A DNA stretch of 64,000 nt from positions 1-64,000 of the IMG/VR virus record IMGVR_UViG_3300044591_002232. One strand, written 5' to 3'. This document shows, one piece after another, positions 1-53,794 of the stretch. Below the pieces are notes generated by a model that was not told the origin of the DNA, ran no database searches, and saw only the letters and a list, made by a program, of their open reading frames with translations. The translations under genes were made by a program, and so were the position numbers. Numbering within the stretch: position 1 is the first letter of the stretch; each line of letters starts with the position of its first letter.

Positions 1-2
1 AG

Positions 3-1328: not shown

Positions 1329-1330
1329 TC

Positions 1331-3203: not shown

Positions 3204-3241
3204 CCGCAGTGATCCGAAAAAATCTATCGGTTTACTAAACT

Positions 3242-3249
3242 TATAAATA
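3242..3249 (+). promoter_or_regulatory. T4-type late promoter TATAAATA
   Basis: Exact T4 late consensus 22 nt before the ATG at 3271. Confidence 0.7.
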
Positions 3250-3270
3250 AACAAAACTTATAATGTCCTC

Positions 3271-4251
3271 ATGAATTTCGTTAAATATGCATTGGAGAAT
3301 GGTGGAACAATTAAACCTCTACTTATAAACCCAGAAGACCTTTCGGGACCATCAATCACAAATCCTTCTGTCTTCATTTATCAGAACAGAATATTAGTCA
3401 ATCTTCGTAATGTAAATTATACATTATATCACGCAGAACTCAATCGGTTTGAGCATATGTGGGGTCCATTATCCTACATTCATCCAGAAAATGATATGCA
3501 CCTGAGAACCACAAATTACATTGCAGAACTAGATGACAATCTAGATACGGTTCACTATTCAAAAATAGATACTTCAGACTTTGATACCTATCAACCACAG
3601 TGGGATTTCGTGGGCCTTGAAGATGTTCGGTTAGTAGAATGGAATGATAAACTCTATGGTATTGGTGTTCGCAGAGACTTAGACGACAAAGGAACCGGAA
3701 GAATGGAAATTAGTGAATTTCAGATTTCTGATTATTCGGTCAAAGAAGTTTTTCGTTATCGTATTCCTGGACCCCCCCCAGATAAAGAATACTGTATGAA
3801 AAACTGTACTCCAATTCTAGATAAACCTTTTCATTTATTAAAGTGGTCTAATCCCACTGCACTAATGAAATTTGATATTACTGGAAAGGAAACAGAAGTC
3901 TTTCAAACTGACCCAAATCCTACTCTACAAACTGACCTAAGAGGTGGTTCTCAGGTAATTCCTTATAAAAACGGATACTTATCACTTCTTCACGAGACAC
4001 ATCTTTATAATTCAGAACAAGGAAGAAAAAACGCGACTTATCGCCATCGGTTTGTAATTTGGGATAAGGAATTTAAACTTCAAAAAGTATCAAAATTATT
4101 TTCGTTTATGAATATAAAAATTGAGTTTTGTTGTGGTCTTGTAGAATATAAAAATGATTACTTGATTACTTTTGGTGCTCAAGATAATGCTGCTTATATT
4201 TTAAAAGTTTCTAAATCATTTGTGGAGGATTTTATTCATGAACAAACTTGA
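3271..4251 (+). CDS. Beta-propeller glycoside hydrolase/phosphorylase-like protein (GH130/GH43-like clan)
   Basis: Motifs NPSV, GLEDVRL, KNCTP, LRGGSQ, IEFCCG and FGAQD are characteristic of this 5-blade family. Confidence 0.65.
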   Translation: MNFVKYALENGGTIKPLLINPEDLSGPSITNPSVFIYQNRILVNLRNVNYTLYHAELNRFEHMWGPLSYIHPENDMHLRTTNYIAELDDNLDTVHYSKIDTSDFDTYQPQWDFVGLEDVRLVEWNDKLYGIGVRRDLDDKGTGRMEISEFQISDYSVKEVFRYRIPGPPPDKEYCMKNCTPILDKPFHLLKWSNPTALMKFDITGKETEVFQTDPNPTLQTDLRGGSQVIPYKNGYLSLLHETHLYNSEQGRKNATYRHRFVIWDKEFKLQKVSKLFSFMNIKIEFCCGLVEYKNDYLITFGAQDNAAYILKVSKSFVEDFIHEQT

Positions 4252-20736: not shown

Positions 20737-21330
20737 ATGTATGTAACTTTAAGGGAGGCAAGAAAACAACTAGGACTTCATCCAAATACCCTTAGAAAGT
20801 ATGCCGATGAGGGGATTATTGAAACAATAAAAACTCCATCTGGACAACGAAGATTCAATGTTGAATCTTTTATAAAACAAAAACAAAATAGTTTACAAAC
20901 AATTCTTTACTGCAGAGTTTCAAGTGCTAGACAAAAAGACGACCTCCAAAATCAAAAAAATTATCTCATCTCAAAGTACCCAGGAGCAGAGGTTATTATT
21001 GATGTCGGCTCTGGACTCAATTTTAAACGAAGAGGTTTGCGTTCCATTTTGGAACGATTATTGCAGGGAGATTCAATCCAACTTGTGGTTGCCCAGCGTG
21101 ACCGACTTTGCAGATTCGGATTTGACCTCATTGAATATCTCGTCGTTAAAAACGGTGGAGAAATCGTGGTTCTCGATCAAATCGAGCACAGTCCAGAAGG
21201 AGAACTTGTATCCGACATCCTTTCTATCATCCATGTTTTCTCTTGTAGAATACATGGGATGCGAAAGTATAAAAATCAAATCAAAGAAGATAAGGATTTA
21301 CCCAAACCAAACTCAAAGACAAATCCTTAG
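20737..21330 (+). CDS. tnpA: IS607 transposase (MerR-like HTH + serine recombinase)
   Basis: YVTLREARKQLGLHPNTLRKY HTH; YCRVSS catalytic Ser; DVGSGLNFKR. Confidence 0.95.
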   Translation: MYVTLREARKQLGLHPNTLRKYADEGIIETIKTPSGQRRFNVESFIKQKQNSLQTILYCRVSSARQKDDLQNQKNYLISKYPGAEVIIDVGSGLNFKRRGLRSILERLLQGDSIQLVVAQRDRLCRFGFDLIEYLVVKNGGEIVVLDQIEHSPEGELVSDILSIIHVFSCRIHGMRKYKNQIKEDKDLPKPNSKTNP

Positions 21331-22411
21331 ACAATGGTTTGGTGCATCAAGATACACTTATAATGAAACCGTTAAGTTTTTAAAAGAACCAGATACTAAG
21401 GCATCTTGGAAATCAATAAAAACTGGTTTGATTCATTCTTTACCCGATTGGGCGGAAGAAATTCCTTATCAAATTAAATCTGTTGCCGTAAGAGATTGCT
21501 GTAAGGCAGTTTCTATGTGTAAACGAAAAAATAGAGGAATTCCACCAGAAGATTGGCATGAAGTTAAATTTAGAAGCAGACGTGAACCAAAACAAACAAT
21601 TTACGTTCCTAAGACTTCTATATCTAAAAATGGTGTTTATCACACTATTTTAGGGAAATTAAAAATGAGTGAAATGCTTCCCGACAACATTATGGATTCA
21701 AGATTAACATTAGATAATGGTAGATACTTTTTAATAATTCCTTACGAAGAAAAAACAATTCCATGTGAGAACCAAGCAAGAGTTGTTTCTTTAGATCCAG
21801 GAGTTAGAATATTCCAGACATTTTATAACCCAGAATTTTCCGGGGCTATTGGTGATGGCGACATTGGTAGAATAACCAGATTATGTTATCATCTTGATTC
21901 TCTAATCTCAAAACGAGATAAGTCTAAGTCTAGAAAAAAATATAGACTCAATAAGGCTATCAAACGAATGAGAAATAAAATCAAAGATTTGGTCGATGAA
22001 ATTCATCATAAGACTGCAAGGTTTTTGGTTGATAATTTTGATATTATTCTTCTTCCTTCATTTGATGTAAGTCAAATGGTTAAAAAGGGTAAGAGAAAAA
22101 TCAACTCTAAAACGACCAGATCTATGTTGACATGGGCTCATTATAGATTTAAGTGTTTTCTTAAAGACAAATGTGAAGAATTTAATAAGGTTCTTCTTAT
22201 TGTTAATGAGGCCTATACATCAAAAACAGTGTCTTGGAATGGAAAAATTAATTACTCTTTAGGTGGATCTAAAGTTGTTAAAGACAAAAACCATTGTGTC
22301 CCTAGAGATATTAATGGAGCCCGAAATATTTGGGTAAAAAGCGTCTCAAGAATTCTTGAGGCTTTGGGAGATAGCCCCTCAAGTAGCAATACTTGTGCAT
22401 TGTTAACGTAA
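21002..22411 (+). CDS. tnpB: IS607 TnpB with Fanzor-like rearranged RuvC (start uncertain: GTG 20924 or ATG 21002)
   Basis: SLDPG (RuvC-I), ILLP in place of the canonical Glu, NEAYTSKT (relocated Glu), RDINGARNI (RuvC-III); Zn-finger cysteines absent. Confidence 0.85.
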   Translation: MSALDSILNEEVCVPFWNDYCREIQSNLWLPSVTDFADSDLTSLNISSLKTVEKSWFSIKSSTVQKENLYPTSFLSSMFSLVEYMGCESIKIKSKKIRIYPNQTQRQILRQWFGASRYTYNETVKFLKEPDTKASWKSIKTGLIHSLPDWAEEIPYQIKSVAVRDCCKAVSMCKRKNRGIPPEDWHEVKFRSRREPKQTIYVPKTSISKNGVYHTILGKLKMSEMLPDNIMDSRLTLDNGRYFLIIPYEEKTIPCENQARVVSLDPGVRIFQTFYNPEFSGAIGDGDIGRITRLCYHLDSLISKRDKSKSRKKYRLNKAIKRMRNKIKDLVDEIHHKTARFLVDNFDIILLPSFDVSQMVKKGKRKINSKTTRSMLTWAHYRFKCFLKDKCEEFNKVLLIVNEAYTSKTVSWNGKINYSLGGSKVVKDKNHCVPRDINGARNIWVKSVSRILEALGDSPSSSNTCALLT

Positions 22412-26386: not shown

Positions 26387-26500
26387 TTGATTTAAAAACT
26401 CCAAAGGAGTTCTCTTAACCTCACGGTTAAAAATTCCTGCTTCAACGCTTACGCCTTCAGCAAATTCGCTTCGGGTCTTATCTCTGCTCCACAGGCAAAC
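26387..26500 (-). ncRNA. Probable TnpB omegaRNA scaffold / element right end
   Basis: Minus strand reads TTGAAGCAGGAA...CCGTGAGG...AACTCCTTTGGAGTT hairpin, then TCAA, as in IS605 right ends. Confidence 0.55.
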
Positions 26501-27582
26501 CCTGCCAATCCGACAGTTAAAATATTTTTTGCCGCATTAATGTCTCTATCGTGAACTGCTCCACAATCATGACAAGTCCATTCACGGACACTTAACGGCA
26601 TAGAAGATTGAATAGAACCACAAGAACTACAAGTTTTACTTGAAGGGAAAAATCTATCAACTTTCAATAGAGTTCTCCCATACCAGTCGCACTTATATTT
26701 TAATAAAAAAATAAATTGCGACCAAGAAACTTCAGCAATTGCTCTTGCTAATTTGTGGTTTTTCAACATACCAGACACATTTAAGTCCTCAACCACTATC
26801 GTTTGATTCTCACGAACAAGTTGAGTGCTTATTTTGTGATGATAATCTAATCTTGTATCTACAATCTTTTGATGTAGTTTAGCAACTTTAACTCTTGCTT
26901 TCTCACGATTTTTAGAACCTTTCTGCTTTTTATATAATCTTTGATTGAGGATTTTTAATCTTTTTTGGACTTTTCTTAACCACTTTGGATTGGTAATTTT
27001 ATCACCGTTAGAAGTAGCAAAGAAACAATCAATACCTAAATCAAGACCTATCACTTTATCTGTTGGTTCAAGTTGTTTGATTTCTTCTTGACACAACATA
27101 CTAATCATCCATCTTCCGCTTGGTTCAAGTGTGATGGTTATAGTAGAAGGATAAGAAGGGATTTGACGAGACCAACGAATATTCAAGGGTTCTTTTGATT
27201 TTGCTATATAAATCTTACCTTCTTTATACTTAAAGGCAGATTTAGTTAATTCACAAGAGTTTCTGTTTTTTCTCTTCTTAAATCTTGGATATTTACTTTT
27301 CTTTTGGAAAAAGTTTTTAAATCCAGTTTGTAGATGTTGAAGAGATTGTTGTAGAGGAACACAAGAAACTTCATTTAACCATTCATACTCTTCTTTTTTC
27401 TTGAGTTCCGTCAAAAGAGCACTTGTTTGATTGTATCCTACAGAGTTTTTATTTTGATGCCATTCTTTGGTTCTATAATCAAGAAAATGATTATAGACCA
27501 CACGGCAACAACCAAGAGTTTTTCTTAAAAGAACCTCTTGACTTTCTGTAGGATAAAATCTAAACTTGTATGCTCTATACAT
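26449..27582 (-). CDS. tnpB: IS200/IS605-type TnpB RNA-guided nuclease, no adjacent tnpA
   Basis: RAYKFRFYP, GLDLG, VVEDL, CSSCG/CHDCG, DRDINAAKNI; all three RuvC acidic residues present. Confidence 0.95.
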   Translation of the reverse strand: MYRAYKFRFYPTESQEVLLRKTLGCCRVVYNHFLDYRTKEWHQNKNSVGYNQTSALLTELKKKEEYEWLNEVSCVPLQQSLQHLQTGFKNFFQKKSKYPRFKKRKNRNSCELTKSAFKYKEGKIYIAKSKEPLNIRWSRQIPSYPSTITITLEPSGRWMISMLCQEEIKQLEPTDKVIGLDLGIDCFFATSNGDKITNPKWLRKVQKRLKILNQRLYKKQKGSKNREKARVKVAKLHQKIVDTRLDYHHKISTQLVRENQTIVVEDLNVSGMLKNHKLARAIAEVSWSQFIFLLKYKCDWYGRTLLKVDRFFPSSKTCSSCGSIQSSMPLSVREWTCHDCGAVHDRDINAAKNILTVGLAGFACGAEIRPEANLLKA

Positions 27583-29676: not shown

Positions 29677-30876
29677 CTATTGATTTTCTAGACGCTTCAA
29701 CGCAGACGCTAAATGATGTTGGACACCATTTAGACTTACTTCCGCTCCACGTCCGTAATCGACATACTCTGCCGATGTTAATTCTTGACCCGAAAGGTCT
29801 AACCACCCTTTTTTAAGGATGTTGATAGAGGCATTTAAGTCTCTATCGCGATGAGAGCCACAAGAAGGACAAGTCCATTCACGAACACTTAAAGGCATCT
29901 TGTCTTCTTTATGTCCACAGTTAGAACAGGTCTTGGAACTAGGGTAAAACCTATCTATTTTGGTCAAAGTTTTTCCGTACCAGTTACACTTGTACTCCAA
30001 CATAGAAACAAAAGTAGACCAAGAGGCATCACTAATGGATTTTGCAAGTTTGTGGTTCTTTAACATTCCAGAAACATTTAAGTCTTCAACAACAATCAAA
30101 TCAAATGTCTTAACAAGTTCTGTTGAAATATTATGCAAGAAATAATTTCTTGAGTTAGTAATGTTTTCGTGTACTTTAGCAACTTTAATACGTTGTCTAT
30201 TGTAACGATTACTACCTTTCTTTTTACGACTTAAATGTTTCTGTGCTTTTTTAAGTTTAGATTGGTTCTTTCTAAACCATCTTGGGTTATTGATGACTTG
30301 ACCATTTGATAAAGTCATTAGTTCTTTTAAACCCAAATCAATACCTACTACTTTACCAGTAGAGGGTATTGGATTGAGTTCTTGTTGGACTAAAATTGAA
30401 ACAAAATACTTTCCGGTTGGAGTTTTAGAAACAGTAATGCTTCTAAAATCGGCTTCTTCAGGGATATTTCGGTCCAGAACAATTTTGACCCAACCAATTT
30501 TTTCGATCCTTATTGAACATTTTTCTTGATCAAGTTTAAATCTAGTTTTTTCTGGAAGCCTAAATGATTGTCTATTGGTCTTTTTCTTGAATTTCGGCTT
30601 TCCAAGTTTAACCTTCCTTTTTTTGTTAAAGTATTGTTTCTTAAACTCAACAAAATCCATTCTTTTTTGTTGAAGTGTTGATGCCGATACTTCTTTAAGG
30701 AACTCAAACTCCTCTTGGTCTTTTAGTGTTTTTTCATTTACTATGGTACCATCATTATTGTTAAAATTTTCAACTAACTTATTCCAAACAAAACGAACAC
30801 AACCAAAAGTTTTAGCAAATAAAACCTCTTGTTCTTTTGTAGGATAAATCCTATATTTGTATGCTTTTAAATGCAT
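29677..30876 (-). CDS. tnpB: IS200/IS605-type TnpB, no adjacent tnpA
   Basis: KAYKYRIYP, GIDLG, VVEDL, CSNCG/CPSCG, DRDLNASINI; RuvC triad intact. Confidence 0.95.
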   Translation of the reverse strand: MHLKAYKYRIYPTKEQEVLFAKTFGCVRFVWNKLVENFNNNDGTIVNEKTLKDQEEFEFLKEVSASTLQQKRMDFVEFKKQYFNKKRKVKLGKPKFKKKTNRQSFRLPEKTRFKLDQEKCSIRIEKIGWVKIVLDRNIPEEADFRSITVSKTPTGKYFVSILVQQELNPIPSTGKVVGIDLGLKELMTLSNGQVINNPRWFRKNQSKLKKAQKHLSRKKKGSNRYNRQRIKVAKVHENITNSRNYFLHNISTELVKTFDLIVVEDLNVSGMLKNHKLAKSISDASWSTFVSMLEYKCNWYGKTLTKIDRFYPSSKTCSNCGHKEDKMPLSVREWTCPSCGSHRDRDLNASINILKKGWLDLSGQELTSAEYVDYGRGAEVSLNGVQHHLASALKRLENQ

Positions 30877-38818: not shown

Positions 38819-39592
38819 TTGACCACATTCAACCCTTTTGATATGATTAACTTATTAAACAAAATTCTTCATTTTTCAGAATCAATTAAATGTTCTAATG
38901 ACCCAATTTATTTTATTAACAATTATGTGAAATTTTCTTCGCTTAAAGAAGATAATGCGCCTTTTCTTCTTTATCCCGCCCAAGAAGAAATTGTCAAAAA
39001 AATTCATAAAAACAAATACAATCTTATAAAGGCCCCAAGACAATTTGGCAAATCATCGGTTCCATTATTCTATCTTTTACATCAGGCAATTTTTAAATCT
39101 AATTGCAATATTGTGATTAGTAGTTTTAGTTATCAAAATTCAAAATATTTACTTGAACGATTCTATAATACATATGAACAGTTACCCGATTGGATTAAAC
39201 CCGGAATAGTAAAAAGAACCTCAATGTGGATAATACTTAAAAATAATTCTAGGGTAAAAATAGTAACAAATATTTCTGCCCCTGAAACTTGGGAGAATTG
39301 GGAATACACTCACGCATTCTTAGATGAGTTTGCTTTTATGGAATATTATACTTCTGAGAATTTATTGGGCTCTTTCTTTCATCGTAATAGCTCTCCTAAA
39401 ATAATCATCGCAAGTACCAAAAAAGAAGGTAGTTATTTTAATGAGCTGGTTGAATATGCAAAGGATGGTATAAACAAATATTCATTATCAGAATATGATT
39501 GGAGAAATATTCCTAGGCTAGATATTAATTGGAAGGAAGAAGTGATTAAAAACATTGGTGAAGATGCCTTTAAACGTGAATACGAATTATGA
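38819..39592 (+). CDS. T4 gp17-like terminase large-subunit ATPase domain only (no nuclease)
   Basis: DPIYFINNYVK, PRQFGKS Walker A, FLDEFAF Walker B, ASTK, ends FKREYE. Possible start at ATG 38843. Confidence 0.8.
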   Translation: MTTFNPFDMINLLNKILHFSESIKCSNDPIYFINNYVKFSSLKEDNAPFLLYPAQEEIVKKIHKNKYNLIKAPRQFGKSSVPLFYLLHQAIFKSNCNIVISSFSYQNSKYLLERFYNTYEQLPDWIKPGIVKRTSMWIILKNNSRVKIVTNISAPETWENWEYTHAFLDEFAFMEYYTSENLLGSFFHRNSSPKIIIASTKKEGSYFNELVEYAKDGINKYSLSEYDWRNIPRLDINWKEEVIKNIGEDAFKREYEL

Positions 39593-44526: not shown

Positions 44527-44829
44527 ATCATGTCACTCACTATAGAAGAGATCCAAAACCAAATTAACACTCTTCAGCAAACCTTAGATCAGCTAAAAAA
44601 TCCAAAACTAGAAATTTCTAGGCACTTTACGGGTCAGTATTTTGCTCCTTATAAAGGAGTTTTTTACCGAAGAATGGAATCCGAGGGTGTTGCGATTTGG
44701 GAAACTTTTCTGGAGCCATCAGAAAGATGGGTTGCGGTCACCGCTAAAGAACTTAAAGAACTAGAAAACATTTTTCAGTCTGATTGCATTACAAAAGAAA
44801 AAGGCGATGATTAAACACCGCCTGGTAAA

Positions 44830-45078
44830 TTATGTGGCTGAGACCAATGATCCATCTTCTTCGGGTGGTTCATTGGTTTTTTCTGTTTCTGGACTTCTCA
44901 ACTGATAAATGGTCGCGTCCTGAGTAACATTCGTCATATCACCAAAATTGATCATGTTTTGATCGATATTGGCAATTTGGCTGTCAATCACATTATAAGG
45001 ATAATATCTCCTGTAATAATATGGATCAATATTATAATAACGCCTATAATAAGGATAAGGCCTAAATCGATAATGCAT
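44830..45078 (-). CDS. Tyr/Arg-rich small protein with a Q/N-rich C-terminal motif
   Basis: AGGAG RBS; YYRRYY repeats, then SQIANIDQNMINFGDMTNVTQ. Confidence 0.75.
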   Translation of the reverse strand: MHYRFRPYPYYRRYYNIDPYYYRRYYPYNVIDSQIANIDQNMINFGDMTNVTQDATIYQLRSPETEKTNEPPEEDGSLVSAT

Positions 45079-45090
45079 TTTTAAGTCTCC

Positions 45091-45219
45091 TTAATAATAG
45101 GGGTAGTAGGAATAATAAGGATACCATCTATTGTAATAGGGATAGCACCTATTCCAATAATAGTCGTCATAACAATATCTCCGCCTGTGGTACGGATAGT
45201 ATGGGTAGGGGTAGTACAT
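45091..45219 (-). CDS. 42-aa tyrosine-rich peptide (20 Tyr)
   Basis: AGGAGA RBS, ATG at 45219: MYYPYPYYPYHRRRYCYDDYYWNRCYPYYNRWYPYYSYYPYY. Confidence 0.7.
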   Translation of the reverse strand: MYYPYPYYPYHRRRYCYDDYYWNRCYPYYNRWYPYYSYYPYY

Positions 45220-45964
45220 TGAGTTCTCCTGCTTGGGATGGGATATCAAATGTCCAAATGTCGTATGCCTCTTTTTCAATATAATCAAAAGGAATCCAAC
45301 AATAGCCGTTGTCTCCCCAATCAGACCCAAAACTATTCTTTGCCAAAAATAGTCTCTTATTTAAATCATAACCAACCATACACATAGCATGGCCTCCAAG
45401 ATTTCTTTCCTTTCTAGAAGGAAAAGTAACAGTAGAAATACGCTCATTTAGATCCATAAAACTTTCATAAATGGTCATTCCAAATACAACTGGTTTGTTG
45501 TTGTTTATCACCTGGGCAATATAATAGGTGCTTATAAGTTTTTGGTAATTAAGAATTTTTCTTTTTATACCGTCCTCATATGCCTCTTCACTTGGTTTTA
45601 TGTTGAATTTGTCTATATCATAAGGCCATAATTTTTCACAACACACTCCATATTTGGATAATGATTTCATGCCATCCCTAAGAAACATTCCCTCGTCTTC
45701 TTCGATTATTCCGTGCTCAAGGCGTGTATTATAATAAACAAATAATCTACTTAGATGAGTAAACTGTTCAGGATAATTTCGATTAACGCAAAGTTCATAG
45801 GCATTTGTTATTGCATTGGCGGCGCAACTACCTAAATCGTCTTGCGATTCGACAATTGTATCCCATTCACGGAGATCTACGGATTCCCGCAAGATCTCTG
45901 TGCTATCGTTTCGGTAAATAAAGTCTCTAGTGTCAATTTGAGATGGTTTAATATTAAATTTCAT
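45167..45964 (-). CDS. Papain-like cysteine protease (C1A)
   Basis: Oxyanion Gln and catalytic Cys in QDDLGSC, His in GGHAM, Asn in KNSFGSDWGDNGY; LSRLFVYY; no signal peptide. Confidence 0.92.
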   Translation of the reverse strand: MKFNIKPSQIDTRDFIYRNDSTEILRESVDLREWDTIVESQDDLGSCAANAITNAYELCVNRNYPEQFTHLSRLFVYYNTRLEHGIIEEDEGMFLRDGMKSLSKYGVCCEKLWPYDIDKFNIKPSEEAYEDGIKRKILNYQKLISTYYIAQVINNNKPVVFGMTIYESFMDLNERISTVTFPSRKERNLGGHAMCMVGYDLNKRLFLAKNSFGSDWGDNGYCWIPFDYIEKEAYDIWTFDIPSQAGELNVLPLPILSVPQAEILL

Positions 45965-45973
45965 GGTTCTAGG

Positions 45974-46507
45974 TTAAATAATGTGCCAATCGCCGCCACG
46001 ACAAATTATGTTGATTGAATCATAAGGTACTTCAATAATGTACTCATCATCACCGTCAATTAATGAGCCATCCAAAGTCGTAATGGTGACTTTACGATTT
46101 CCGAGTGGTGGACCCATTTCTGCCTTTACGATGATCTCATAACAGTCGATGCAGTTTTCAGGTAGTGTAATAGTAACAGGTTCGTTGCTGTTGACACCGA
46201 TATAGTAATCATCGCAAGTAGCATCATAATCATCTGAAACCAGGATGCTTTTGCATTTACAGGTACACACTCCTGGCTCCCCTGGGGGTCCTGGGGGTCC
46301 TGGGGGTCCTGGGGGTCCTTCATTGCAGTGGTTGATAGTGTCCCTATCATCAATTTTGATGATAGTTTTATCGCCACGATCATTCAACATCGATGTTATT
46401 TCAGATCGAGTTGAATTAATGGCACCCTCTAGGGCTGGGTCATTATTTCTTTGATATTGGGCCAAAAGATTATAAAGATCAATGAGTTTTCTTTCTGCTG
46501 AGTCCAT
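45974..46507 (-). CDS. Short-collagen (GPP)4, Cys-rich protein with a fibre-head-like C-terminal domain
   Basis: GPPGPPGPPGPPGEPG-VCTCKC, then DYYIGVNS..VTITLP..IIVK..IDG..PY.S. Confidence 0.8.
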   Translation of the reverse strand: MDSAERKLIDLYNLLAQYQRNNDPALEGAINSTRSEITSMLNDRGDKTIIKIDDRDTINHCNEGPPGPPGPPGPPGEPGVCTCKCKSILVSDDYDATCDDYYIGVNSNEPVTITLPENCIDCYEIIVKAEMGPPLGNRKVTITTLDGSLIDGDDEYIIEVPYDSINIICRGGDWHII

Positions 46508-46523
46508 AGTTATTCTCCTTTTT

Positions 46524-46547
46524 AAAAAAGGGGGAGTTACCTCCCCC
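46524..46547 (-). terminator. Intrinsic terminator inside the minus-strand operon
   Basis: Minus strand GGGGGAG-GTAA-CTCCCCC followed by a U-run, between the first and second genes. Confidence 0.75.
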
Positions 46548-46566
46548 AGATAACTACTGAATTAAA

Positions 46567-47361
46567 TCAGCGTACAGCGTTGCTGGTTGAGGACTGACCA
46601 ACACCGGCCATGGTTCCGAAGTTAACCATACCTTGACGGGTCTCAGCAATTTGGCTGTTTAGGGCATTTAGCTGAGAGTTAACCTGGGAAGACAGGGCTG
46701 CAAATTGCGTATTGACGAGACCATCTCTGGCACCCCAATAGTCGTGGCGGCAATGTTGGAGATCAGTGTTGCGCTCAATAAGAAGACGATTGAGTTCATC
46801 ATTCTTGAGAGAATTGATGAGGTCACGGGTCTTCTCGTTTTCATAACCGACCTGCTTGCTAAGTTCAAACTTGCTCTCGGCAATTTCCTTGCTGAGTTGA
46901 GATTGACCTAGGGCAACAGCGGCGGCAACTTTAGCGGACTCAAGAGCAGTAGCAGTGGCCCCCCTTTCAGCAGTGAGAAGAATCTCGGTGCTGAGTTTTT
47001 GGGAGGCCATGTCTGTAGTTGCTTTTAGAGCCGCAACATCACGGGAAGTATCAAAATCTCTTGCTTGGCCAGCAAGATAGAAATCAGTGGCTCTTTGCTG
47101 AATCTTATCAGCGGCCTCATCGACTTTAACCTGAGTATGATAACCAGTGGTTAAAATATCACGGTTGGTTGATTCAGCGTGATCGGCAATTGCATACTTG
47201 ATTTCGCCTTGACCGACTGCATTAGCATAACGGTTATCGGCTGAGCGAGTAGCAACATCATAACGAATCTCGCCGCGCTCTACAGAACCTTCTCTACGAA
47301 TGTCTGAGTGCTGACCGGCAAGAATAGACCAGGGATCCGGTGCATAAACTGTGTCTGGCAT
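46567..47361 (-). CDS. 264-aa hendecad/coiled-coil protein with a Q/N-rich C-terminal motif
   Basis: AGGAG RBS before ATG 47361 (MPDTVY); 11-residue periodicity GEIRYDVATRS/ADNRYANAVGQ/GEIKYAIADHA. Confidence 0.85.
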   Translation of the reverse strand: MPDTVYAPDPWSILAGQHSDIRREGSVERGEIRYDVATRSADNRYANAVGQGEIKYAIADHAESTNRDILTTGYHTQVKVDEAADKIQQRATDFYLAGQARDFDTSRDVAALKATTDMASQKLSTEILLTAERGATATALESAKVAAAVALGQSQLSKEIAESKFELSKQVGYENEKTRDLINSLKNDELNRLLIERNTDLQHCRHDYWGARDGLVNTQFAALSSQVNSQLNALNSQIAETRQGMVNFGTMAGVGQSSTSNAVR

Positions 47362-47599
47362 TTGTTTTTCTCCTAAGGAAAAGAAAGGGTGGTTTGTTGG
47401 TAACACAATCTAATTCCTTCCTGACATAATGTCAGACGAGTCGGTTCTACAGGCGGCTGCAAATGAGTCGTCTGAGATTATTTCTCTTAGAATTGGATTA
47501 TGTTACCCAATTAGAGGAGAAGCATTAATGAAAGAGCCATTTCTGGAATCTTTTAGTAATACATCTTATTCTCTAAAGAGGAGAATTTCGTCTCCTGTT

Positions 47600-47863
47600 T
47601 TATTTAGTAAATTCGGAACGCCATTTTAAAAACCCGGCAATTGTATTTGGGTATTTTGGTTTTGCCCGACCTCTTGGTTTCTTTTGGGTTTTTATAAAAC
47701 ACTCATAATCAGACCAATTAAATGTTGGAATGGATCGATCTTGCTCAAGGCTTACCCAAAAGGTGGATTCATTTTTTAAGTGATCTTTCCACAAGGTAAA
47801 GGTGGCAAAAATTAATAACCAACCGAGTTTTATGTTTGAACAGAATTTTTTAATAGAAATCAT
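47600..47863 (-). CDS. Hypothetical basic protein
   Basis: 87-aa ORF with a basic C-terminus. Confidence 0.5.
   Translation of the reverse strand: MISIKKFCSNIKLGWLLIFATFTLWKDHLKNESTFWVSLEQDRSIPTFNWSDYECFIKTQKKPRGRAKPKYPNTIAGFLKWRSEFTK
47601..47608 (-). promoter_or_regulatory. Late-promoter-like ACTAAATA heading the minus-strand operon
   Basis: Same box as the other late-like sites, ~240 nt upstream of ATG 47361. Confidence 0.55.
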
Positions 47864-47906
47864 ATGCTCTTTTAATGAACTTAATATTATATATGGGGTT
47901 TAGGGC

Positions 47907-47935
47907 TTGACAAATTGGTGGATCCGTGCTAGTGT
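47907..47935 (+). promoter_or_regulatory. Canonical sigma70-type promoter
   Basis: TTGACA-17 nt-TAGTGT with an upstream TG; drives the gene at 47958. Confidence 0.7.
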
Positions 47936-47957
47936 GGAGCACCAGACCAGATGGAGC

Positions 47958-48155
47958 ATGACTGATTTAATTACTTTTACACAAACATCAGACGAGCCAT
48001 ATTTACGGCACGATTACAAAATCCACTTCATAAATAAGAAGACCAGAACATTTAACAATTACCAGGACGTACTTCAGACTTGGTTTCAGACACCAAGTGA
48101 ACTTTTAGATTATGTCGAGATTTTAGACTACCGAGAAAAAGCGAAGGGGTTTTAA
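47958..48155 (+). CDS. Hypothetical protein (MTDLITFTQTS..)
   Basis: GGAG RBS; YxRHxYK motif. Confidence 0.7.
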   Translation: MTDLITFTQTSDEPYLRHDYKIHFINKKTRTFNNYQDVLQTWFQTPSELLDYVEILDYREKAKGF

Positions 48156-48205
48156 AATGCAAATTAACTGGTTTAACGTATTGATAGATCTTTATATTAT
48201 CTGGT

Positions 48206-48622
48206 ATGGATTTAATTACGGAAAAAATAAAGATGATAAGTAAACCAATTTTAGGAACAGAAAATAAAACAAAAATGTCGTGGGCCGAGTATATTTTTAC
48301 TCACGTTCTTCCTACCTGGGTTCAGGTTTTTAGAATGAACTTTAGAATCTGGTCTGACCTAATGACAGATAATTTAGATAATTATGCTCTTCTAAAAAAT
48401 GATGATCCACTAGAAGAATGTTTGGGTTGGTTTTGGTCTAGTCTCGGTGAAGATGAGGTTTATCCAAAAGAGTTTCTAGAACATCTACTTCAGATGGTTG
48501 ATGATATTGACACTGGTAAGGTAAAGACTTATACATTAGAAGAATGTAGGGAAGACCTAAAACTTTTAGGAGTGGACGATTCTGAAAGTGACCACTTAGG
48601 CTCCAAATCTGGTTTAAATTGA
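48206..48622 (+). CDS. Hypothetical protein
   Basis: 138-aa ORF. Confidence 0.65.
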   Translation: MDLITEKIKMISKPILGTENKTKMSWAEYIFTHVLPTWVQVFRMNFRIWSDLMTDNLDNYALLKNDDPLEECLGWFWSSLGEDEVYPKEFLEHLLQMVDDIDTGKVKTYTLEECREDLKLLGVDDSESDHLGSKSGLN

Positions 48623-48655
48623 GTTAAACTGTGAAAGTTCAAAGGAAAATTATTA

Positions 48656-48940
48656 ATGACTGACCCTATCCACATTGCACTAGACCGACTACATGACTAT
48701 GCAGTTGGCCATCCTAATCATGACACTGATGAGATAGTGGAAGCCGCCATCGCCGCCATCGCCGCCGAACGGGAAGCATGTGCGCGGATTTGTGATAAGC
48801 AATACGAAAGGGCACGAACCAGCACAGGTGCAGCACGAGCCGATGCCTGCGCCACGGCTATTCGCGCCCGCACCGCCCTGACAAAAGAACAATTTACCGC
48901 TTCTAGTCAGTTTATCGAAAAAGATGATGACCAAATTTAG
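48656..48940 (+). CDS. Chimeric hypothetical protein spanning the AT-to-GC junction
   Basis: AT-rich N-terminus, then GC-rich AIAAIAAEREACARIC. Confidence 0.6.
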   Translation: MTDPIHIALDRLHDYAVGHPNHDTDEIVEAAIAAIAAEREACARICDKQYERARTSTGAARADACATAIRARTALTKEQFTASSQFIEKDDDQI

Positions 48941-49448
48941 ACAGCTGCCTGGCCAAGATGTCTTAAGGGAGCTTTTCCGCTACAGCGACTCCGATGGCGC
49001 ATTGTTCTGGAAGTATCGCCATAACAGTCAAATCGATCTGAGCAAACCCGCTGGCTGGCTGCAGCAAAATGGCTATCACGGGATTGCTGTGAACGGAGTC
49101 AAGTACAAGAGACATCGTATCATCTGGTGTTTCTTTAATCGTGATCCCAGGGAAATGGAAGTGGATCATATTAACGGAATCAGGAATGATGATAGGATCG
49201 AGAATCTGAGATTGGCTACCCGAACTCAGAATCAATACAACCGTCCCGTCCTTTCTACCAATAAGTGCGGACTAAAAGGTGTTTCACCTCACCATAACAA
49301 GTGGCGTGCGCAAATTCAAGATAGCAATGGACGGAATAAGTTTTTAGGTACTTTTGCTACACCAGAAGACGCTGCAGCAGCCTACGCAAAGGCTGCTCTT
49401 GAGCTTCAGGGTCAGTTTGTCCACCAATCCCTTACCACTCATGTCTAG
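48924..49448 (+). CDS. HNH endonuclease with C-terminal AP2 domain (homing-endonuclease type)
   Basis: HRIIW, EVDHINGIRNDDRIENLRLAT, GVS..KWRAQI..FLGTF.TPEDAAAAY. Confidence 0.9.
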   Translation: MMTKFRQLPGQDVLRELFRYSDSDGALFWKYRHNSQIDLSKPAGWLQQNGYHGIAVNGVKYKRHRIIWCFFNRDPREMEVDHINGIRNDDRIENLRLATRTQNQYNRPVLSTNKCGLKGVSPHHNKWRAQIQDSNGRNKFLGTFATPEDAAAAYAKAALELQGQFVHQSLTTHV

Positions 49449-50124
49449 TCATCAGTTGCCCAGCAAAAATAACCACCCATCCCGCCCGGACCTGTCCAAA
49501 ATGACAAGCAATCTTTTATCGGATGGTGGCTACGAAGCCAGCTCAATGTGGACTGGCCATGGAACACGGCAGGTGGCCCAGCACGAGCCTGAGGTGGCGG
49601 GGCCAGTCACAGATGGCCGTCCCATGAACCAGTCTTACTGGTTGGCATTACTCAACCACGATGCCTATGCAGCATCATTCCAATCAGTGGGCCAGTACCG
49701 ATCAGCATTGATCGAACGTGCGTCATCACCACGGGCCCAGCCCGAGCGAGAGGGACCGACAGATGAAGAGTGGGAAGACCTAAAGGAGCGCCTGTGGGAT
49801 CAGTACCAAACCGTTGGTTATCAAGGCGAGCGCTTTATGTACGACGCCGATTTCTACACGGCGCTTGATGTTGCCCGCCAAGAGATCACCCGCCACGCCC
49901 GCCCCACCATCGAGCCGGTGCCCGTGGCTGAGCGGCTGCCGGGACCGGAGGATTGTGATGCCAAAGGAAGATGCTGGGTCGGATGCCCTGAATTCAGCGA
50001 CGACGGCGATTACGGACCGACCACGTTTAACCCATCTTGGGAGCTGGCACCTTTCGCCCAAGGGGACACCCACTGGCGCCCCCACAACGCCCTGCCGGTG
50101 CCCGGTGCGGAGGTGCAATCGTGA
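49441..50124 (+). CDS. GC-rich hypothetical protein with a DUF551-like C-terminus
   Basis: EPVPVAERLPGPEDCD..GRCW...THWRPH. Start at ATG 49441 or 49501 is uncertain. Confidence 0.65.
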   Translation: MSSHQLPSKNNHPSRPDLSKMTSNLLSDGGYEASSMWTGHGTRQVAQHEPEVAGPVTDGRPMNQSYWLALLNHDAYAASFQSVGQYRSALIERASSPRAQPEREGPTDEEWEDLKERLWDQYQTVGYQGERFMYDADFYTALDVARQEITRHARPTIEPVPVAERLPGPEDCDAKGRCWVGCPEFSDDGDYGPTTFNPSWELAPFAQGDTHWRPHNALPVPGAEVQS

Positions 50125-50779
50125 AGGTCGAAGACTTCAGAGCCAGCATCATCGCCGCAGCCGCTCTCCTTCCACCTGAGCCCCGAGGCCCAAAATCAGG
50201 CACGACCTGCCTCTATCGCGGTGGCGAGGTTCTGTGGTGGGCCGAGCCTGATCCATGGTCCCCCATTCTGTCGGTGCCCGGTGCCTGAGGGGGAGGTAAT
50301 GGCACGACCTTAGCCGAGAATGACACTTTAAGAACTGTCCACTTCTGACAAAATTCTAGAAATCCCTAGATACAATAAGATCAAATCAATTCAGGTTTCC
50401 AATGTCCCGCACCCATCGCCAAACTTCTTACAATAAATGTGCTCTTAGGAGCCCCAAAACCCTGAACGAAAAACGTCAAATTGATTCTTTTCTCACCGAT
50501 GATGAAACTGTGGAGTTTCAGATTTCTGGTATGAATAGGATCAAAAATCGCCGGTCCATTCCCACACATCACGACGACATTGTTTGTTCTTCTTATTATG
50601 AGACTGATTATGACCACCACTGAAAAAACTGCGTATTCTAAGTCTATGTTAGCAGATGCCGAAGATTTTCTCTGGAAAAACTTTGGTATCTCTGTAGGAA
50701 CCCCCGATTATGAATGGCCTCAAGATCAAATCATCTCAGAGGCTGTAAAACGCGGCTGGAAATTTAGTTTTTATTGATT

Positions 50780-51250
50780 ATGACAACCAAAACACAACTT
50801 CAAACCAAAATTCAAGAACTAGAAGAAGAACTTTCTTCTTTTAAACAACAATTGAATAACTATAAAAACCATCCAACTATTCAAGAGGCATCTGTAGGTG
50901 ACGTTCTTGAGGATGGCTGTATCGTCCTTAAAAAAGAAAATGGTGTCGCTCTTTTGGTGGCCCCAAAATCAACCGATGTTTATGCTACTTGGAGTAAAGA
51001 ATTCCCTAAATTCTTCAAGAAACTAGAAGAACAAGGATTTAATCCTTCTCAGTTCTTTATTCCAACCATGGATCAACTTAATCTTGCCTATAAGACCATT
51101 CCTCAACACTTCACCAGGACCATCTATTGGTCTTCTACAGAGTTTAATGCTACGGGTGCTTACTGTCAGGGCTTTAGCGGTGGTAGCATCTTCAGCTTCA
51201 GTAAGACGATCAAGAACAGCGTGCGTGCCTTCCGGTGTGTTACTTATTGA
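50780..51250 (+). CDS. DGR-target-like CLec/DUF1566-like protein, copy 2
   Basis: Paralogue of 12276..12746; YWSSTE...VRAFRCVTY. Confidence 0.8.
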   Translation: MTTKTQLQTKIQELEEELSSFKQQLNNYKNHPTIQEASVGDVLEDGCIVLKKENGVALLVAPKSTDVYATWSKEFPKFFKKLEEQGFNPSQFFIPTMDQLNLAYKTIPQHFTRTIYWSSTEFNATGAYCQGFSGGSIFSFSKTIKNSVRAFRCVTY

Positions 51251-51512
51251 ACCTTGACACTTGAGGAACTGTCCATACTTCTGCCCGCACCACAAATGCG
51301 GGCTTTATAATATTCACAGTTAATCCAAATTCAATGGACACCTTCGGATTTTATGATGCATCAAATTGGCCCCAAGATCCTAAACAAAACTCGGCTTGGA
51401 ATGCCTATGCAAGGTCCACCACTCGGCGGTATCTTTCACCCGGAATCGCCCCTGAATGTTTTGTTGTAAGGCATCGTGGCTATAAGGGATACTACGTTTT
51501 TGGTAAATAAAC

Positions 51513-51836
51513 ATGGCAATTTGGGAAGCTAAAATTATTGCGGTTCAAAACGGACCCTTTATTAATGTGCGAGTAAATGCAAGTTCTGCAAACACCGCAA
51601 AAGCAACAATTAATGCGATTTATAATAATCCCCCAATGATTACTAACCTTAGATGTGTTAGTAGTATGGATAGTGGTGGTAATTACACATCTTCCTCGGA
51701 TCCAGATGATATGACTATCAAGTACTGGATTTTAGGAATTGGTACTGTTTTATATTTTGCCGTGACTTATTGGTATATCGCCATTCCTTTGGGGATTTTG
51801 GCATTTATTTTGTGGCTTAAATGGAACAGTTTGTAA
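51513..51836 (+). CDS. Membrane-anchored hypothetical protein
   Basis: C-terminal hydrophobic segment. Confidence 0.7.
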   Translation: MAIWEAKIIAVQNGPFINVRVNASSANTAKATINAIYNNPPMITNLRCVSSMDSGGNYTSSSDPDDMTIKYWILGIGTVLYFAVTYWYIAIPLGILAFILWLKWNSL

Positions 51837-52404
51837 ATTTTGATTGCGTCTTTTTGGGTCAATTCCAAAACTGTCACAACCCTGTCAGCAAATGGCAACC
51901 ATGTGCCCTAAGATACAGAGCAATCGAAAAAAGCCAATGATTTCTTATTTCTCCCAAATTCTCGCCAATGATCTCACTGTTGATGATATTGAGAATCTTT
52001 CACTAGAAGATACTTATAAGGTTCTAGACGAACTACAATCTTATAAGGAAGTTTATTTCGCAAAATGGCGTAAGGTCCCAAAAGCCGAGATTGATTCAGA
52101 AAAGAGTGTTGAAATTCTTGAGGACATGAAGGCCTACAATACTCTTTTTATTGTCGCAAAGCGTCGGGCTCATTATCTCAATCATGCAAAGGTGAAGCAA
52201 CTGACAACTGCTGTTATTGTATGGAAAAAGCGTGCCTTTAAACTTGGTAAGGACCTCGGTTTTTCTAATGACCAGGTGAAGGAGATTATGGTTTACTGAA
52301 CTTAATTAAATAAGCCGTAACAGATCCAACAAGAAGAACACAAAAACCAGTAAGAATTTCTTGGGTCATTGTTTTTCCATAAATACTTATTATTTATTGA
52401 TATC

Positions 52405-53081: not shown

Positions 53082-53160
53082 ACTCCACTGGCGAAACGGT
53101 AAACGCGGCAGACTCAAAATCTGCTTCTTCGGATTCCCAGTTCAAATCTGGGGTGGAGTA
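53082..53160 (+). tRNA. trnL: tRNA-Leu (anticodon CAA)
   Basis: Acceptor ACTCCAC/GTGGAGT, D-stem GCG/CGC, anticodon arm GCAGA-CTCAAAA-TCTGC, TC-TTCG-GA variable arm, T-arm CCCAG-TTCAAAT-CTGGG; CCA not encoded. Confidence 0.92.
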
Positions 53161-53794
53161 CTAACCTACTATTCTTTATTATGAACACTTTACATCAAGA
53201 CATTGAAAAAATTACTAATATGAGTTGCGGCGATGTAATTGATATTAATATGTCTGAAGAATCTGGTGGAGAAGTTCATCGTCATAATGATGGCTTGGTT
53301 CTTTATGAAATCCCATTATATGGTGGTGAAGGTAATTTAGTCGCAACATACCAGTTTAATAAAGAAGGTATTGAAGAATTAGTTACAACAGTCCATTCTT
53401 GGACATAGTAAGTATTTTTTACCATGAACACCACAGAAACCATTAATCTTCTCACAAAAAGAATCAAAAATCTTAAAGAAGAACTAGACCAAAATCCACA
53501 ATATAAACAAAACATTGTGGATTCTATTCTAGACGACATTTCTTATTATCAAAACCAACTGAATTCTTTACGAGACCAATGACTGAAGAAAATTTCTATC
53601 TTTTGTGGGAAAGATTCGCTCTTTCTGAAATTACAAAAAGTATTCCTGATAATGTAGAAGAATTTTGTAAACAGAATGAAATTACTGTTGATTATTTTAT
53701 AGAGGAGTGGTTGTGACGATTTGAAAGGTGCCCACCTCTTAAGGCCCAGCCGCAATCCATCCACTAAAATTACCAAGCATTTCACAAGAAACTT

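What the first reader, a model, noticed from the sequence alone, without database searches (positions are those of the whole stretch)
44896..46668. Two proteins of the operon share a hidden 33-aa Q/N-rich motif (possible co-polymerisation or amyloid-like signal)
Seen: the C-terminus of the 264-aa protein, NALNSQIAETRQGMVNFGTMAGVGQSSTSNAVR (46570-46668), aligns without gaps to residues 29-61 of the 82-aa protein, NVIDSQIANIDQNMINFGDMTNVTQDATIYQLR (44896-44994), with 15/33 identities (SQIA, Q.M.NFG.M..V.Q..T....R). The proteins are otherwise unrelated. The pattern resembles strand-turn-strand with Q/N ladders. Established: curli CsgA/CsgB and HET-s or RHIM-type pairs use shared short motifs for templated co-assembly. 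Inference: a major subunit plus a nucleator or minor subunit that displays a Tyr/Arg-rich domain.
Basis: partly seen in the sequence, partly recalled or inferred. Interest (0 to 1): 0.8.

Follow-up and report, generated by a model that had tools for sequence, protein, structure and literature searches.

The report
Shared anchor motif in phage fibre cassette
Two otherwise unrelated proteins of an uncultured lake jumbo phage share a real, deeply conserved 33-residue motif that most likely fastens them to a common partner in a fibre-building gene cassette, and nothing tested supports an amyloid.

Summary
The last 33 residues of the 264-aa protein A align without gaps to residues 29-61 of the 82-aa protein B (15/33 identical). 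Profiles built from each family alone find the other as the only hit in the window.

The motif is conserved in both families across about 100 viral contigs. In 1.84 billion proteins it occurs in only two architectures. One is a long helical protein with the motif at its extreme C-terminus. The other is a small protein with a 38%-tyrosine N-terminus followed by the motif.

Both genes belong to a syntenic cassette of uncultured T4-like freshwater jumbo phages. Its order is (LuxR-type regulator) – A – conserved terminator hairpin – collagen-like fibre protein – (second fibre protein) – papain-like protease – Tyr-rich peptides. A is predicted to be one roughly 240-residue helix carrying variable 11-residue repeats. 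B is predicted to be disordered.

My best reading is a shared docking or co-assembly module of a virion fibre system, with A abundant and B minor. The amyloid/curli/HET-s reading is not supported, but it is not excluded. Both families and the cassette appear undescribed.

The parts
47886..47913 (-). Sigma-70-like promoter match (TTGTCA-16-TATAAT) upstream of the small upstream gene
   Evidence: 11 of 12 consensus positions. This is a consensus match only and does not show function.
47600..47863 (-). UP87, an 87-aa protein with one hydrophobic N-terminal segment, followed by a hairpin. It lies upstream of A in the close clade only.
   Evidence: It is conserved at 47-52% identity upstream of A in close relatives. 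In 16 distant loci a LuxR/GerE-HTH regulator gene occupies this position instead.
46567..47361 (-). Gene A, 264 aa. It is a long all-helical protein with N-terminal 11-residue repeats (D-I-R-R-E-x-A-x-G-x-G) and an almost invariant C-terminal tail.
   Evidence: RBS AGGAG before the ATG. The family has 972 members. AlphaFold2 predicts one helix over residues 10-251, with pLDDT above 90 for residues 60-190. Family lengths differ by multiples of 11 in 65 of 120 members. No Pfam, PHROG or PDB match.
46570..46668 (-). Motif copy in A (residues 232-264, the protein's C-terminus)
   Evidence: ETRQGMVNFGTM is the most conserved 12-residue window of the family, with mean column identity 0.95 across members only 31-90% identical overall.
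46530..46547 (-). Terminator-like hairpin GGGGGAG-GTAA-CTCCCCC plus a T-run, between A and the collagen-like gene
   Evidence: A GC-rich stem plus T-run sits at the same place in all 26 distinct loci folded, although the stem sequences differ.
45974..46507 (-). COL, 177 aa. It has an N-terminal helix, a (GPP)n collagen-like stretch and a C-terminal beta domain.
   Evidence: Pfam Collagen is weak. The ESM Atlas groups it with phage collagen-like fibre proteins, and the structural neighbours of its nearest Atlas cluster include T4 gp9/gp10-type domains. The C-domain profile hits PDB 9f4a 'Long tail fiber proximal subunit' (E 8.6e-5) and 'Baseplate wedge tail fiber connector' (E 0.0047). It lies directly after A in nearly all loci.
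45167..45964 (-). PEP, a 265-aa papain-family (C1) cysteine peptidase with Q41, C47, H192 and N210 in place
   Evidence: Pfam PF00112, E 4e-14. Catalytic motifs located. Present in most loci.
45091..45219 (-). Y2, a 42-aa peptide that is about 50% tyrosine and carries no motif. It has its own AGGAG ribosome-binding site and overlaps the last 17 codons of PEP.
   Evidence: Y2-like ORFs are present in the relatives.
44830..45078 (-). Gene B, 82 aa. It has a Tyr/Arg/Pro-rich N-terminus (residues 1-28), the motif (29-61) and a Pro/Glu-rich tail (62-82).
   Evidence: The family has 146 hits, plus 86 representative clusters. Across the family the N-terminus is 38% Y, 14.5% R and 12% P. AlphaFold2 gives no confident structure, mean pLDDT 54.
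44896..44994 (-). Motif copy in B (residues 29-61)
44802..44823 (-). Terminator-like hairpin plus T-run that ends the operon

Best explanation
The motif (S-Q-x5-Q-x3-N-x-G-x-M-x2-V-x-Q-x-S-x3-[NQ]-[VL]-R) is a homologous terminal module shared by two protein families of a fibre-building cassette in uncultured T4-like freshwater jumbo phages. I propose that it is a docking or co-assembly element.

Its first half continues the long helix of protein A. Its second half is a short extended tail that normally ends in a free C-terminus. With this module the abundant helical rod protein A and the scarce, disordered, tyrosine/arginine-rich peptide B attach either to the same conserved partner or to each other. 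A has a variable N-terminal end built of 11-residue repeats. In both proteins the variable, functional part lies on the N-terminal side of the anchor.

The best candidate partner is the collagen-like fibre protein encoded directly after A. Its C-terminal domain is of the type T4 uses to connect long tail fibres to the baseplate.

Shown here: homology and deep conservation of the motif, the restriction to two architectures, the synteny, the helical prediction for A, the fibre-type domain in COL, and the conserved hairpin after A.

Inferred: physical contact, the identity of the partner, location on the virion, and stoichiometry.
For: - The motif is homologous and conserved in both families.
- In 1.84 billion representative proteins, 160 hits fall into only two architectures: long proteins with the motif at the extreme C-terminus, and small Tyr-rich proteins.
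- The A tail is almost invariant (0.95 mean column identity) while the rest of A drops to 31-40% identity and its N-terminal repeat number varies. This is the pattern expected of an attachment end opposite a variable end.
- A is predicted as one helix over residues 10-251, running into the motif.
- The cassette A-COL(-COL2)-PEP-Tyr-rich peptides is syntenic in about 50 distinct viral contigs.
- Searching from COL instead, 43 of 49 loci have an A-type motif protein immediately upstream. The exceptions are truncated contigs, apparently degraded loci (L101/L102) or a divergent A.
- COL and COL2 share a domain related to the T4-type long-tail-fibre proximal subunit and the baseplate tail-fibre connector.
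- The most conserved window of COL, K-[AS]-E-M-G-P-P-L-G-N-R-K at 0.96, matches the invariance of the A tail.
- A hairpin plus T-run directly after A is conserved in position in 26 of 26 loci, which fits A being made in excess over COL, PEP and B.
- Some B proteins end exactly at the motif's last residue, as A always does.
- Within a genome the A and B motifs are slightly more alike than across genomes: 12.5 versus 11.5 identities, with 0 of 10,000 permutations reaching the observed value. In L058 both copies carry the same two-residue insertion.
Against: - No contact between A, B or COL was shown, because multimer modelling was not available.
- AlphaFold2 confidence within the motif is low: pLDDT 74 falling to 41 in A, and about 60 in B.
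- Hydrophobic periodicity in A does not exceed that of shuffled sequences, so a classical coiled coil is not demonstrated.
- The insertion covariation is not general. In L059 and L060, A has the insertion and B does not.
- The permutation test ignores the relatedness of the genomes.
- Eleven loci of the first (A-based) scan and further loci of the COL-based scan have A and Tyr-rich peptides but no motif-bearing B, so B's motif is dispensable in some lineages.
- In 16 distant loci the cassette has its own LuxR-type regulator, and in the window it sits among replication genes. This is unusual for core virion genes.
- No cultured phage carries the cassette, so no virion proteomics exists.
Confidence: 0.45

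Rival explanations
1. Amyloid-like templating. The motif folds as a strand-turn-strand cross-beta unit, and A and B co-polymerise or seed each other, as in curli CsgA/CsgB or in the HET-s, RHIM and bacterial BASS motif pairs.
For: - One short motif is shared by two otherwise unrelated proteins encoded in the same operon, which is the genomic signature used to discover amyloid signalling motifs (paper 10.1101/2020.01.06.895854, read).
- The second half of the motif has an i/i+2 conservation pattern (N16, G18, M20, V23, Q25, S27) with an N-x-G turn.
- The motif is 21-27% Q+N.
- B is predicted disordered on its own, so it could fold on a template.
Against: - AlphaFold2 puts motif residues 1-20 of A into the helix.
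- There is one motif copy per protein, not tandem repeats.
- No NLR (NACHT or NB-ARC), Bell or HeLo domains and no curli export genes lie in or near the cassette.
- In A the motif is attached to a roughly 240-residue helix, not to a globular effector.
- The context is a phage fibre cassette.
- The S...Q...N...Q spacing differs from the curli repeat (from my own knowledge of the curli consensus).
Confidence: 0.12
2. Recognition or processing signal. The motif is what an enzyme or an assembly machine recognises. The most obvious candidate is the cassette's papain-like protease, which would trim B's Pro/Glu-rich tail after the conserved [VL]-R and leave the same C-terminus as A. Alternatively it is a targeting peptide that loads both proteins into or onto the capsid, like the T4 capsid-targeting sequence or encapsulin cargo peptides.
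For: - An apparently active C1 peptidase, with Q41, C47, H192 and N210, is part of the cassette in most loci.
- The motif ends in [LVI]-R in 73 of 203 B proteins and in nearly all A proteins. A hydrophobic P2 with Arg at P1 suits papain-type enzymes (that preference is from my own knowledge).
- B tails after this point vary in length and composition. Ten B proteins end within one residue of it.
- A always ends there.
Against: - 38 of 203 B proteins have S-M and others have I-G or V-G at the putative site.
- Several loci with both motif proteins show no peptidase within 6 kb (L031, L045, L046, L053).
- A 33-residue, nearly invariant stretch is far longer than a protease site needs.
- No capsid or scaffold genes are adjacent.
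Confidence: 0.2
3. Independent oligomerisation cap. The motif is a self-association unit, analogous in role to the foldon of T4 fibritin, that sets the oligomeric state of each protein separately. A and B would never touch.
For: - The motif sits at the end of a long helical rod in A.
- It is strongly conserved at the polar positions Q12, N16 and Q25, which could be buried register-setting residues.
- The two-residue insertion is not consistently shared between the A and B of one genome.
Against: - It is not similar in sequence to the fibritin foldon, and no Pfam or PDB hit was found.
- B is tiny, and apart from the motif it is low-complexity, so a dedicated oligomerisation domain would make up most of its ordered part.
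- The tight co-occurrence of A and B in one cassette argues for a functional link.
Confidence: 0.15

Closest known systems
Conserved anchor modules shared by different phage fibre and tailspike proteins (T4 gp34-gp9 attachment; branched tailspike systems)
   Same: Unrelated functional parts carry one conserved terminal module that fixes them to a common platform. The cassette's COL and COL2 proteins carry a domain related to the T4-type long-tail-fibre proximal subunit and the baseplate tail-fibre connector.
   Different: In the known systems the anchor is usually an N-terminal folded domain. Here it is a 33-residue C-terminal or internal peptide with no detectable relative in Pfam, PHROGs or the PDB. 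One of its carriers is a 38%-tyrosine disordered peptide.
T4 fibritin (wac), a long coiled coil with a C-terminal foldon
   Same: A long helical rod ends in a short conserved C-terminal unit, in a T4-like phage.
   Different: There is no sequence similarity. Oligomeric state was not tested. The hydrophobic repeat is not significant. Fibritin has no second small protein sharing its foldon.
Amyloid signalling motif pairs (HET-s/NWD2, RHIM, bacterial BASS with Bell and NLR proteins)
   Same: A short motif of about 20-30 residues is shared by two adjacent, co-directional genes whose products are otherwise unrelated (for the defining pattern).
   Different: No NLR and no Bell or HeLo domain is present. 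In A the motif lies at the C-terminus of a helical rod, and in B it is internal. The carrier is a virus, not a cellular immune locus. Predicted structure is partly helical.
Curli CsgA/CsgB
   Same: A major and a minor protein share a Ser/Gln/Asn-containing motif and are encoded together.
   Different: The motif is a single copy instead of five tandem repeats. No csgEFG-like genes lie in the neighbourhood examined, and by eye the proteins show no obvious signal peptide. The spacing of conserved residues differs.
Terminal targeting peptides (encapsulin cargo-loading peptides, T4 capsid-targeting sequence)
   Same: A short conserved terminal peptide is shared by unrelated proteins of one operon and directs them to one assembly.
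   Different: Those peptides are about 10-15 residues long and pair with a shell or scaffold gene. Here the motif is 33 residues and the neighbours are fibre-type genes.
Bacillus spore-coat and exosporium components (Tyr-rich CotT, collagen-like BclA, GerE regulator, YabG protease)
   Same: The cast is similar: small tyrosine-rich proteins, a collagen-like fibre, a cysteine protease, and in distant loci a GerE/LuxR-type regulator.
   Different: This is a resemblance of composition only. The Atlas score is 0.58, below the level of a lead. No homology was shown. The A family was not found in a two-pattern scan of 185,579 bacterial and archaeal species genomes.

Membership tests
Amyloid signalling motif pair (HET-s/RHIM/BASS type) | Same short motif in two adjacent, co-directional genes | tested here: met
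   A and B lie in one minus-strand operon about 1.5 kb apart.
Amyloid signalling motif pair (HET-s/RHIM/BASS type) | One partner is an NLR-type receptor (NACHT or NB-ARC plus repeats) with the motif at its N-terminus | tested here: not met
   A, B and the neighbouring genes have no such Pfam domain. In A the motif is C-terminal.
Amyloid signalling motif pair (HET-s/RHIM/BASS type) | The other partner is a membrane-targeting effector (Bell, HeLo or similar) with the motif at its C-terminus | tested here: not met
   A is a helical rod of about 240 residues. B is a Tyr-rich peptide.
Amyloid signalling motif pair (HET-s/RHIM/BASS type) | The motif forms a cross-beta fold and templates its partner | not testable with these tools
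   Only monomer AlphaFold2 was available. It gives helix plus disorder in A and no structure in B.
Curli (CsgA/CsgB) | Tandem imperfect repeats of the Ser/Gln/Asn motif | tested here: not met
   There is one motif stretch per protein, with only three proteins showing a second, weak stretch.
Curli (CsgA/CsgB) | Dedicated export genes (csgE/F/G) and secretion signals | tested here: not met
   No such genes were found in the cassette in the window or in about 50 related loci.
T4 fibritin-type whisker | Long helical coiled-coil rod | tested here: inconclusive
   A single long helix is predicted, but no significant 3.5 or 3.67 hydrophobic periodicity was found. Oligomer state was not tested.
T4 fibritin-type whisker | C-terminal foldon homologous to fibritin's | tested here: not met
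   No Pfam or PDB match for A or for the motif profile.
Phage fibre network with gp34/gp9-type attachment domains | Presence of the gp34 N-terminal / gp9-type beta domain | tested here: met
   The COL/COL2 C-domain profile against the PDB gives 9f4a long tail fiber proximal subunit at E 8.6e-5 (best single stretch i-E 0.27) and baseplate tail fiber connector at E 0.0047. The structural neighbours of COL's nearest Atlas cluster include T4_gp9_10_N and Gp10_C families.
Phage fibre network with gp34/gp9-type attachment domains | The proteins are parts of the virion | not testable with these tools
   No cultured phage carries the cassette.
Papain-family (C1) peptidase (gene PEP) | Gln/Cys/His/Asn catalytic set in the C1 fold | tested here: met
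   PF00112 at E 4e-14. Q41, C47, H192 and N210 sit in the expected motifs.

The most novel reading that the evidence does not exclude
The motif is a templating or interlocking unit through which a phage builds a composite external material. In this picture rods of A are capped or bridged by peptides that are nearly 40% tyrosine and are then cross-linked or processed, with the help of the papain-like protease. The result would be a coat-like or adhesive fibre layer on a virion, or in the infected cell, switched on by its own LuxR-type regulator. That would be a new kind of viral extracellular matrix or adhesion system, possibly using amyloid-like or dityrosine chemistry.
Probability: 0.12. Interest if true: 0.85.

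Novelty: new variant of a known kind. Interest (0 to 1): 0.58.

Why it matters
The cassette is common in lake metagenomes. Family A alone has 972 clusters, found on contigs of 160-400 kb, yet none of its three signature families (A, B and Y2) has any annotation, solved structure or cultured representative.

It pairs a long helical rod of adjustable length with some of the most tyrosine-rich natural peptides on record, through one invariant 33-residue module. If that module is a portable docking peptide, it explains how these phages mount different functional parts on one platform, and it could be reused as an assembly tag. If it is an amyloid-like or cross-linking unit, this would be the first such system in a virion.

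Either way the finding gives a precise and cheap set of binding and assembly experiments for a widespread block of viral dark matter.

Tried and rejected
- Annotation searches. Pfam, PHROGs, PDB sequence searches and the ESM Atlas gave nothing for A, B or the motif.
- Cultured phages. DNA and tblastn searches of 50,697 phage records gave no match for the operon or for A. COL gave one weak hit, in Salicola phage SCTP-2.
- Peptidase relatives. Relatives of PEP occur in Burkholderia phage FLC9 and in a 595-kb uncultured phage. Their neighbourhoods hold no motif, collagen or Tyr-rich ORFs, so they are not the same cassette.
- Bacterial and archaeal genomes. A scan of 185,579 species genomes found no A relative. 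A scan with the B alignment could not be run because it has no stretch conserved enough.
- T4 late promoter. TATAAATA is not enriched in the window and is absent near the operon.
- Hydrophobic periodicity of A did not exceed that of shuffled sequences, so I do not call it a proven coiled coil.
- Indel covariation between the A and B motifs is seen in L058 but contradicted by L059 and L060, so it cannot serve as proof of direct contact.
- No strict numerical relation holds between motif-bearing genes and COL-domain genes per locus.
- Metatranscriptomes. Four freshwater RNA runs hold contigs about 85% like gene A, and fewer like COL. The runs were chosen by gene A and could contain DNA, so this is only weak evidence of transcription.
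- A fold search with the A model was not run, because a single helix gives meaningless matches.
Full report
**Observation**

BLASTP of the whole proteins finds only this segment, at E 1e-7.

Homologues make the case much stronger. Family A has 972 members and family B 146 in the 5.8-billion-protein collection. Many sit on the same contigs. The motif is kept in both families.

- A profile built from A homologues alone finds B as the only significant hit among 1410 six-frame ORFs of the window (E 3e-6). The B-only profile finds A (E 1.5e-7).
- Profile-profile comparison aligns exactly the 33 columns (probability 95.8%, E 7e-9).
- Invariant positions are Q12, N16, G18 and Q25. S5 and M20 are nearly invariant.
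- DNA identity over the motif is only 56/99, so this is old homology and not a recent copy.

**Where the motif occurs**

A 33-column motif profile was searched against 1.84 billion representative proteins. It gave 160 hits at E ≤ 0.001, and these fall into just two architectures.

- Proteins of about 180-450 aa carry the motif at the extreme C-terminus.
- Proteins of about 45-130 aa carry it after a tyrosine-rich N-terminus.

Over 203 B-type proteins the N-terminal part is 38% Tyr, 14.5% Arg and 12% Pro. The part after the motif is Pro/Glu-rich and variable in length. Ten of these proteins end within one residue of the motif's last position, as A always does.

No PDB chain, Pfam family or PHROG matches the motif, A or B.

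**Genomic setting**

The window is part of a 249,820-bp IMG/VR contig from lake water. It encodes a terminase, primase, helicase, RNA ligase, HNH endonucleases and IS200/IS605-type transposases. Its terminase is 38% identical to gp17 of T4-like cyanophages. It is therefore an uncultured T4-like jumbo phage.

A and B belong to a minus-strand operon, in this order:

1. a small membrane protein
2. A
3. a terminator-like hairpin
4. a collagen-like protein (COL)
5. a papain-family peptidase with its catalytic residues intact (PEP)
6. a 42-aa peptide that is half tyrosine (Y2)
7. B
8. a terminator

This cassette is syntenic in about 50 distinct viral contigs, down to 31% identity in A. It often includes a second fibre protein, COL2, that shares COL's C-terminal domain.

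Starting the search from COL instead gives the same picture. Of 49 loci, 43 have an A-type motif protein immediately upstream. The exceptions are truncated contigs, apparently degraded loci (L101/L102) or a divergent A.

In 16 distant loci the gene directly upstream of A encodes a LuxR/GerE-type HTH regulator.

A was not found in 185,579 bacterial and archaeal species genomes, nor in 50,697 cultured-phage records.

**What the parts look like**

- **A.** AlphaFold2 with a 39-sequence alignment models A as one helix from residue 10 to 251, with pLDDT above 90 for residues 60-190. The helix runs into the first 20 motif residues, and the last 13 are disordered. The N-terminal third consists of 11-residue repeats (D-I-R-R-E-x-A-x-G-x-G). 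Their copy number varies, so family lengths step by 11: 65 of 120 lengths are congruent to 264 mod 11. The C-terminal tail is the most conserved part, at 0.95 mean column identity.
- **B.** No confident structure is predicted.
- **COL.** It groups with phage collagen-like fibre proteins. The domain it shares with COL2 matches the PDB chains 'Long tail fiber proximal subunit' (E 8.6e-5) and 'Baseplate wedge tail fiber connector' (E 0.0047) of entry 9f4a. In T4 nomenclature these are gp34 and gp9 (my own knowledge). The most conserved window of COL is a K-A-E-M-G-P-P-L-G-N-R-K loop, at 0.96.
- **Hairpin after A.** A GC-rich hairpin with a T-run lies directly after A in all 26 distinct loci folded, although the stems differ in sequence. 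This is the classic arrangement for making the first gene's product in excess.

**Interpretation**

The pattern has four elements:

- an almost invariant terminal peptide on a protein whose other end is variable;
- the same peptide on a small protein that otherwise consists of a low-complexity 'payload';
- both encoded in one cassette with fibre-type attachment domains;
- a conserved attenuator after the first gene.

This fits a shared docking or co-assembly module best. A would be the abundant rod. B would be a minor component that brings a Tyr/Arg-rich segment to the same site. COL is the most likely partner.

Two observations hint at concerted evolution of the two copies. Within a genome the A and B motifs are slightly more alike than across genomes (12.5 versus 11.5 identities; 0 of 10,000 permutations reached this). 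In one genome both copies carry the same two-residue insertion. Both hints are weak. The genomes are related to one another, and two other genomes have the insertion in A only. I give this reading 0.45.

**Rivals**

- **Amyloid-like co-polymerisation.** The genomic signature resembles that of amyloid signalling motif pairs, and the second half of the motif has a strand-like conservation pattern. Against it, the defining partners are absent, the motif is single-copy, the first half is predicted helical and the context is a fibre cassette. I give it 0.12.
- **Processing or targeting signal.** The cassette has its own protease, the motif ends in [VL]-R, B's tails are variable, and some B proteins end exactly there. 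Against it, many B proteins have other residues at that point and some loci lack the protease nearby. I give it 0.2.
- **Foldon-like self-oligomerisation cap without A-B contact.** This remains possible. I give it 0.15.

**Novelty and limits**

The principle of one anchor carried by several different payloads is known in phage fibres, in encapsulins and in amyloid signalling. This motif, both carrier families, the extreme tyrosine content of B and Y2, and the cassette as a whole appear undescribed.

Nothing here shows that the proteins are in the virion, that they touch, or what the tyrosine-rich segments do. Multimer modelling and simple binding, ThT and cleavage assays would decide between the readings.

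Noticed in passing
window 46530-46547 (-) and the equivalent place in L003-L053: A GC-rich hairpin followed by a T-run sits directly after gene A in all 26 distinct loci folded. The stems have different sequences, so position and shape are conserved rather than sequence. It is probably an attenuator or an mRNA-stabilising 3' end.
   Followed up: partly
L035-L047, L050, L051, L053 (about 100-700 nt upstream of A, e.g. L040:4686-5360): In the distant clade a gene for a LuxR/GerE-type HTH regulator lies immediately upstream of A, co-directional with it (PF00196, E 1e-15 to 1e-19). Its N-terminal domain of about 160 aa is not recognised. The window's clade has the 87-aa membrane protein there instead.
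   Followed up: partly
window 45091-45219 (-): Y2 is a 42-aa ORF that is about 50% tyrosine. It has its own AGGAG ribosome-binding site and overlaps the last 17 codons of the peptidase gene in another frame. Tyr/Trp/Asp-rich small ORFs without the motif also occur in loci that lack a motif-bearing B (L035, L039, L042, L048).
   Followed up: partly
B-family proteins (e.g. P0124, P0178, L010:9019-9279): 61 of 203 B-type proteins carry a conserved cysteine motif, G-[IV]-C-T, in the Pro/Glu-rich tail after the shared motif. The window's B lacks it.
   Followed up: no
L109:4064-4735: This divergent A-type protein sits upstream of a COL gene. It has lost the canonical motif and ends in a poly-Q run followed by ...WGQLYNIR. 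It keeps only the terminal [N]-I-R that some B proteins also end with.
   Followed up: no
window 20924-22411 (+), 26449-27582 (-), 29677-30876 (-): Three IS200/IS605 TnpB-type transposase ORFs lie within 10 kb (phrog_506, E down to 1e-139).
   Followed up: no
window 38819-39592 (+): Only the C-terminal nuclease half of a T4-type large terminase is encoded in this ORF (matches gp17 of S-PM2 at 38%). The gene may be split, possibly by an inserted element.
   Followed up: no
window 1-4000 and 46000-52000: GC content rises to 0.49 in the first 4 kb and to 0.43-0.47 around 46-52 kb, against about 0.36 elsewhere. The second patch includes an Ala-rich ORF (48656-48940) with overlapping ORFs on both strands, and an HNH endonuclease gene (48924-49448).
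   Followed up: no
window 53082-53161 (+): A single tRNA-Leu(CAA) gene.
   Followed up: no
window 46691-47567 (metatranscriptome contigs): Four freshwater metatranscriptome runs hold contigs about 85% identical to gene A (word depth 10-45), and fewer or shallower pieces of COL. Relatives of A therefore seem to be transcribed in lakes. The runs were selected by gene A, and DNA carry-over cannot be excluded.
   Followed up: partly
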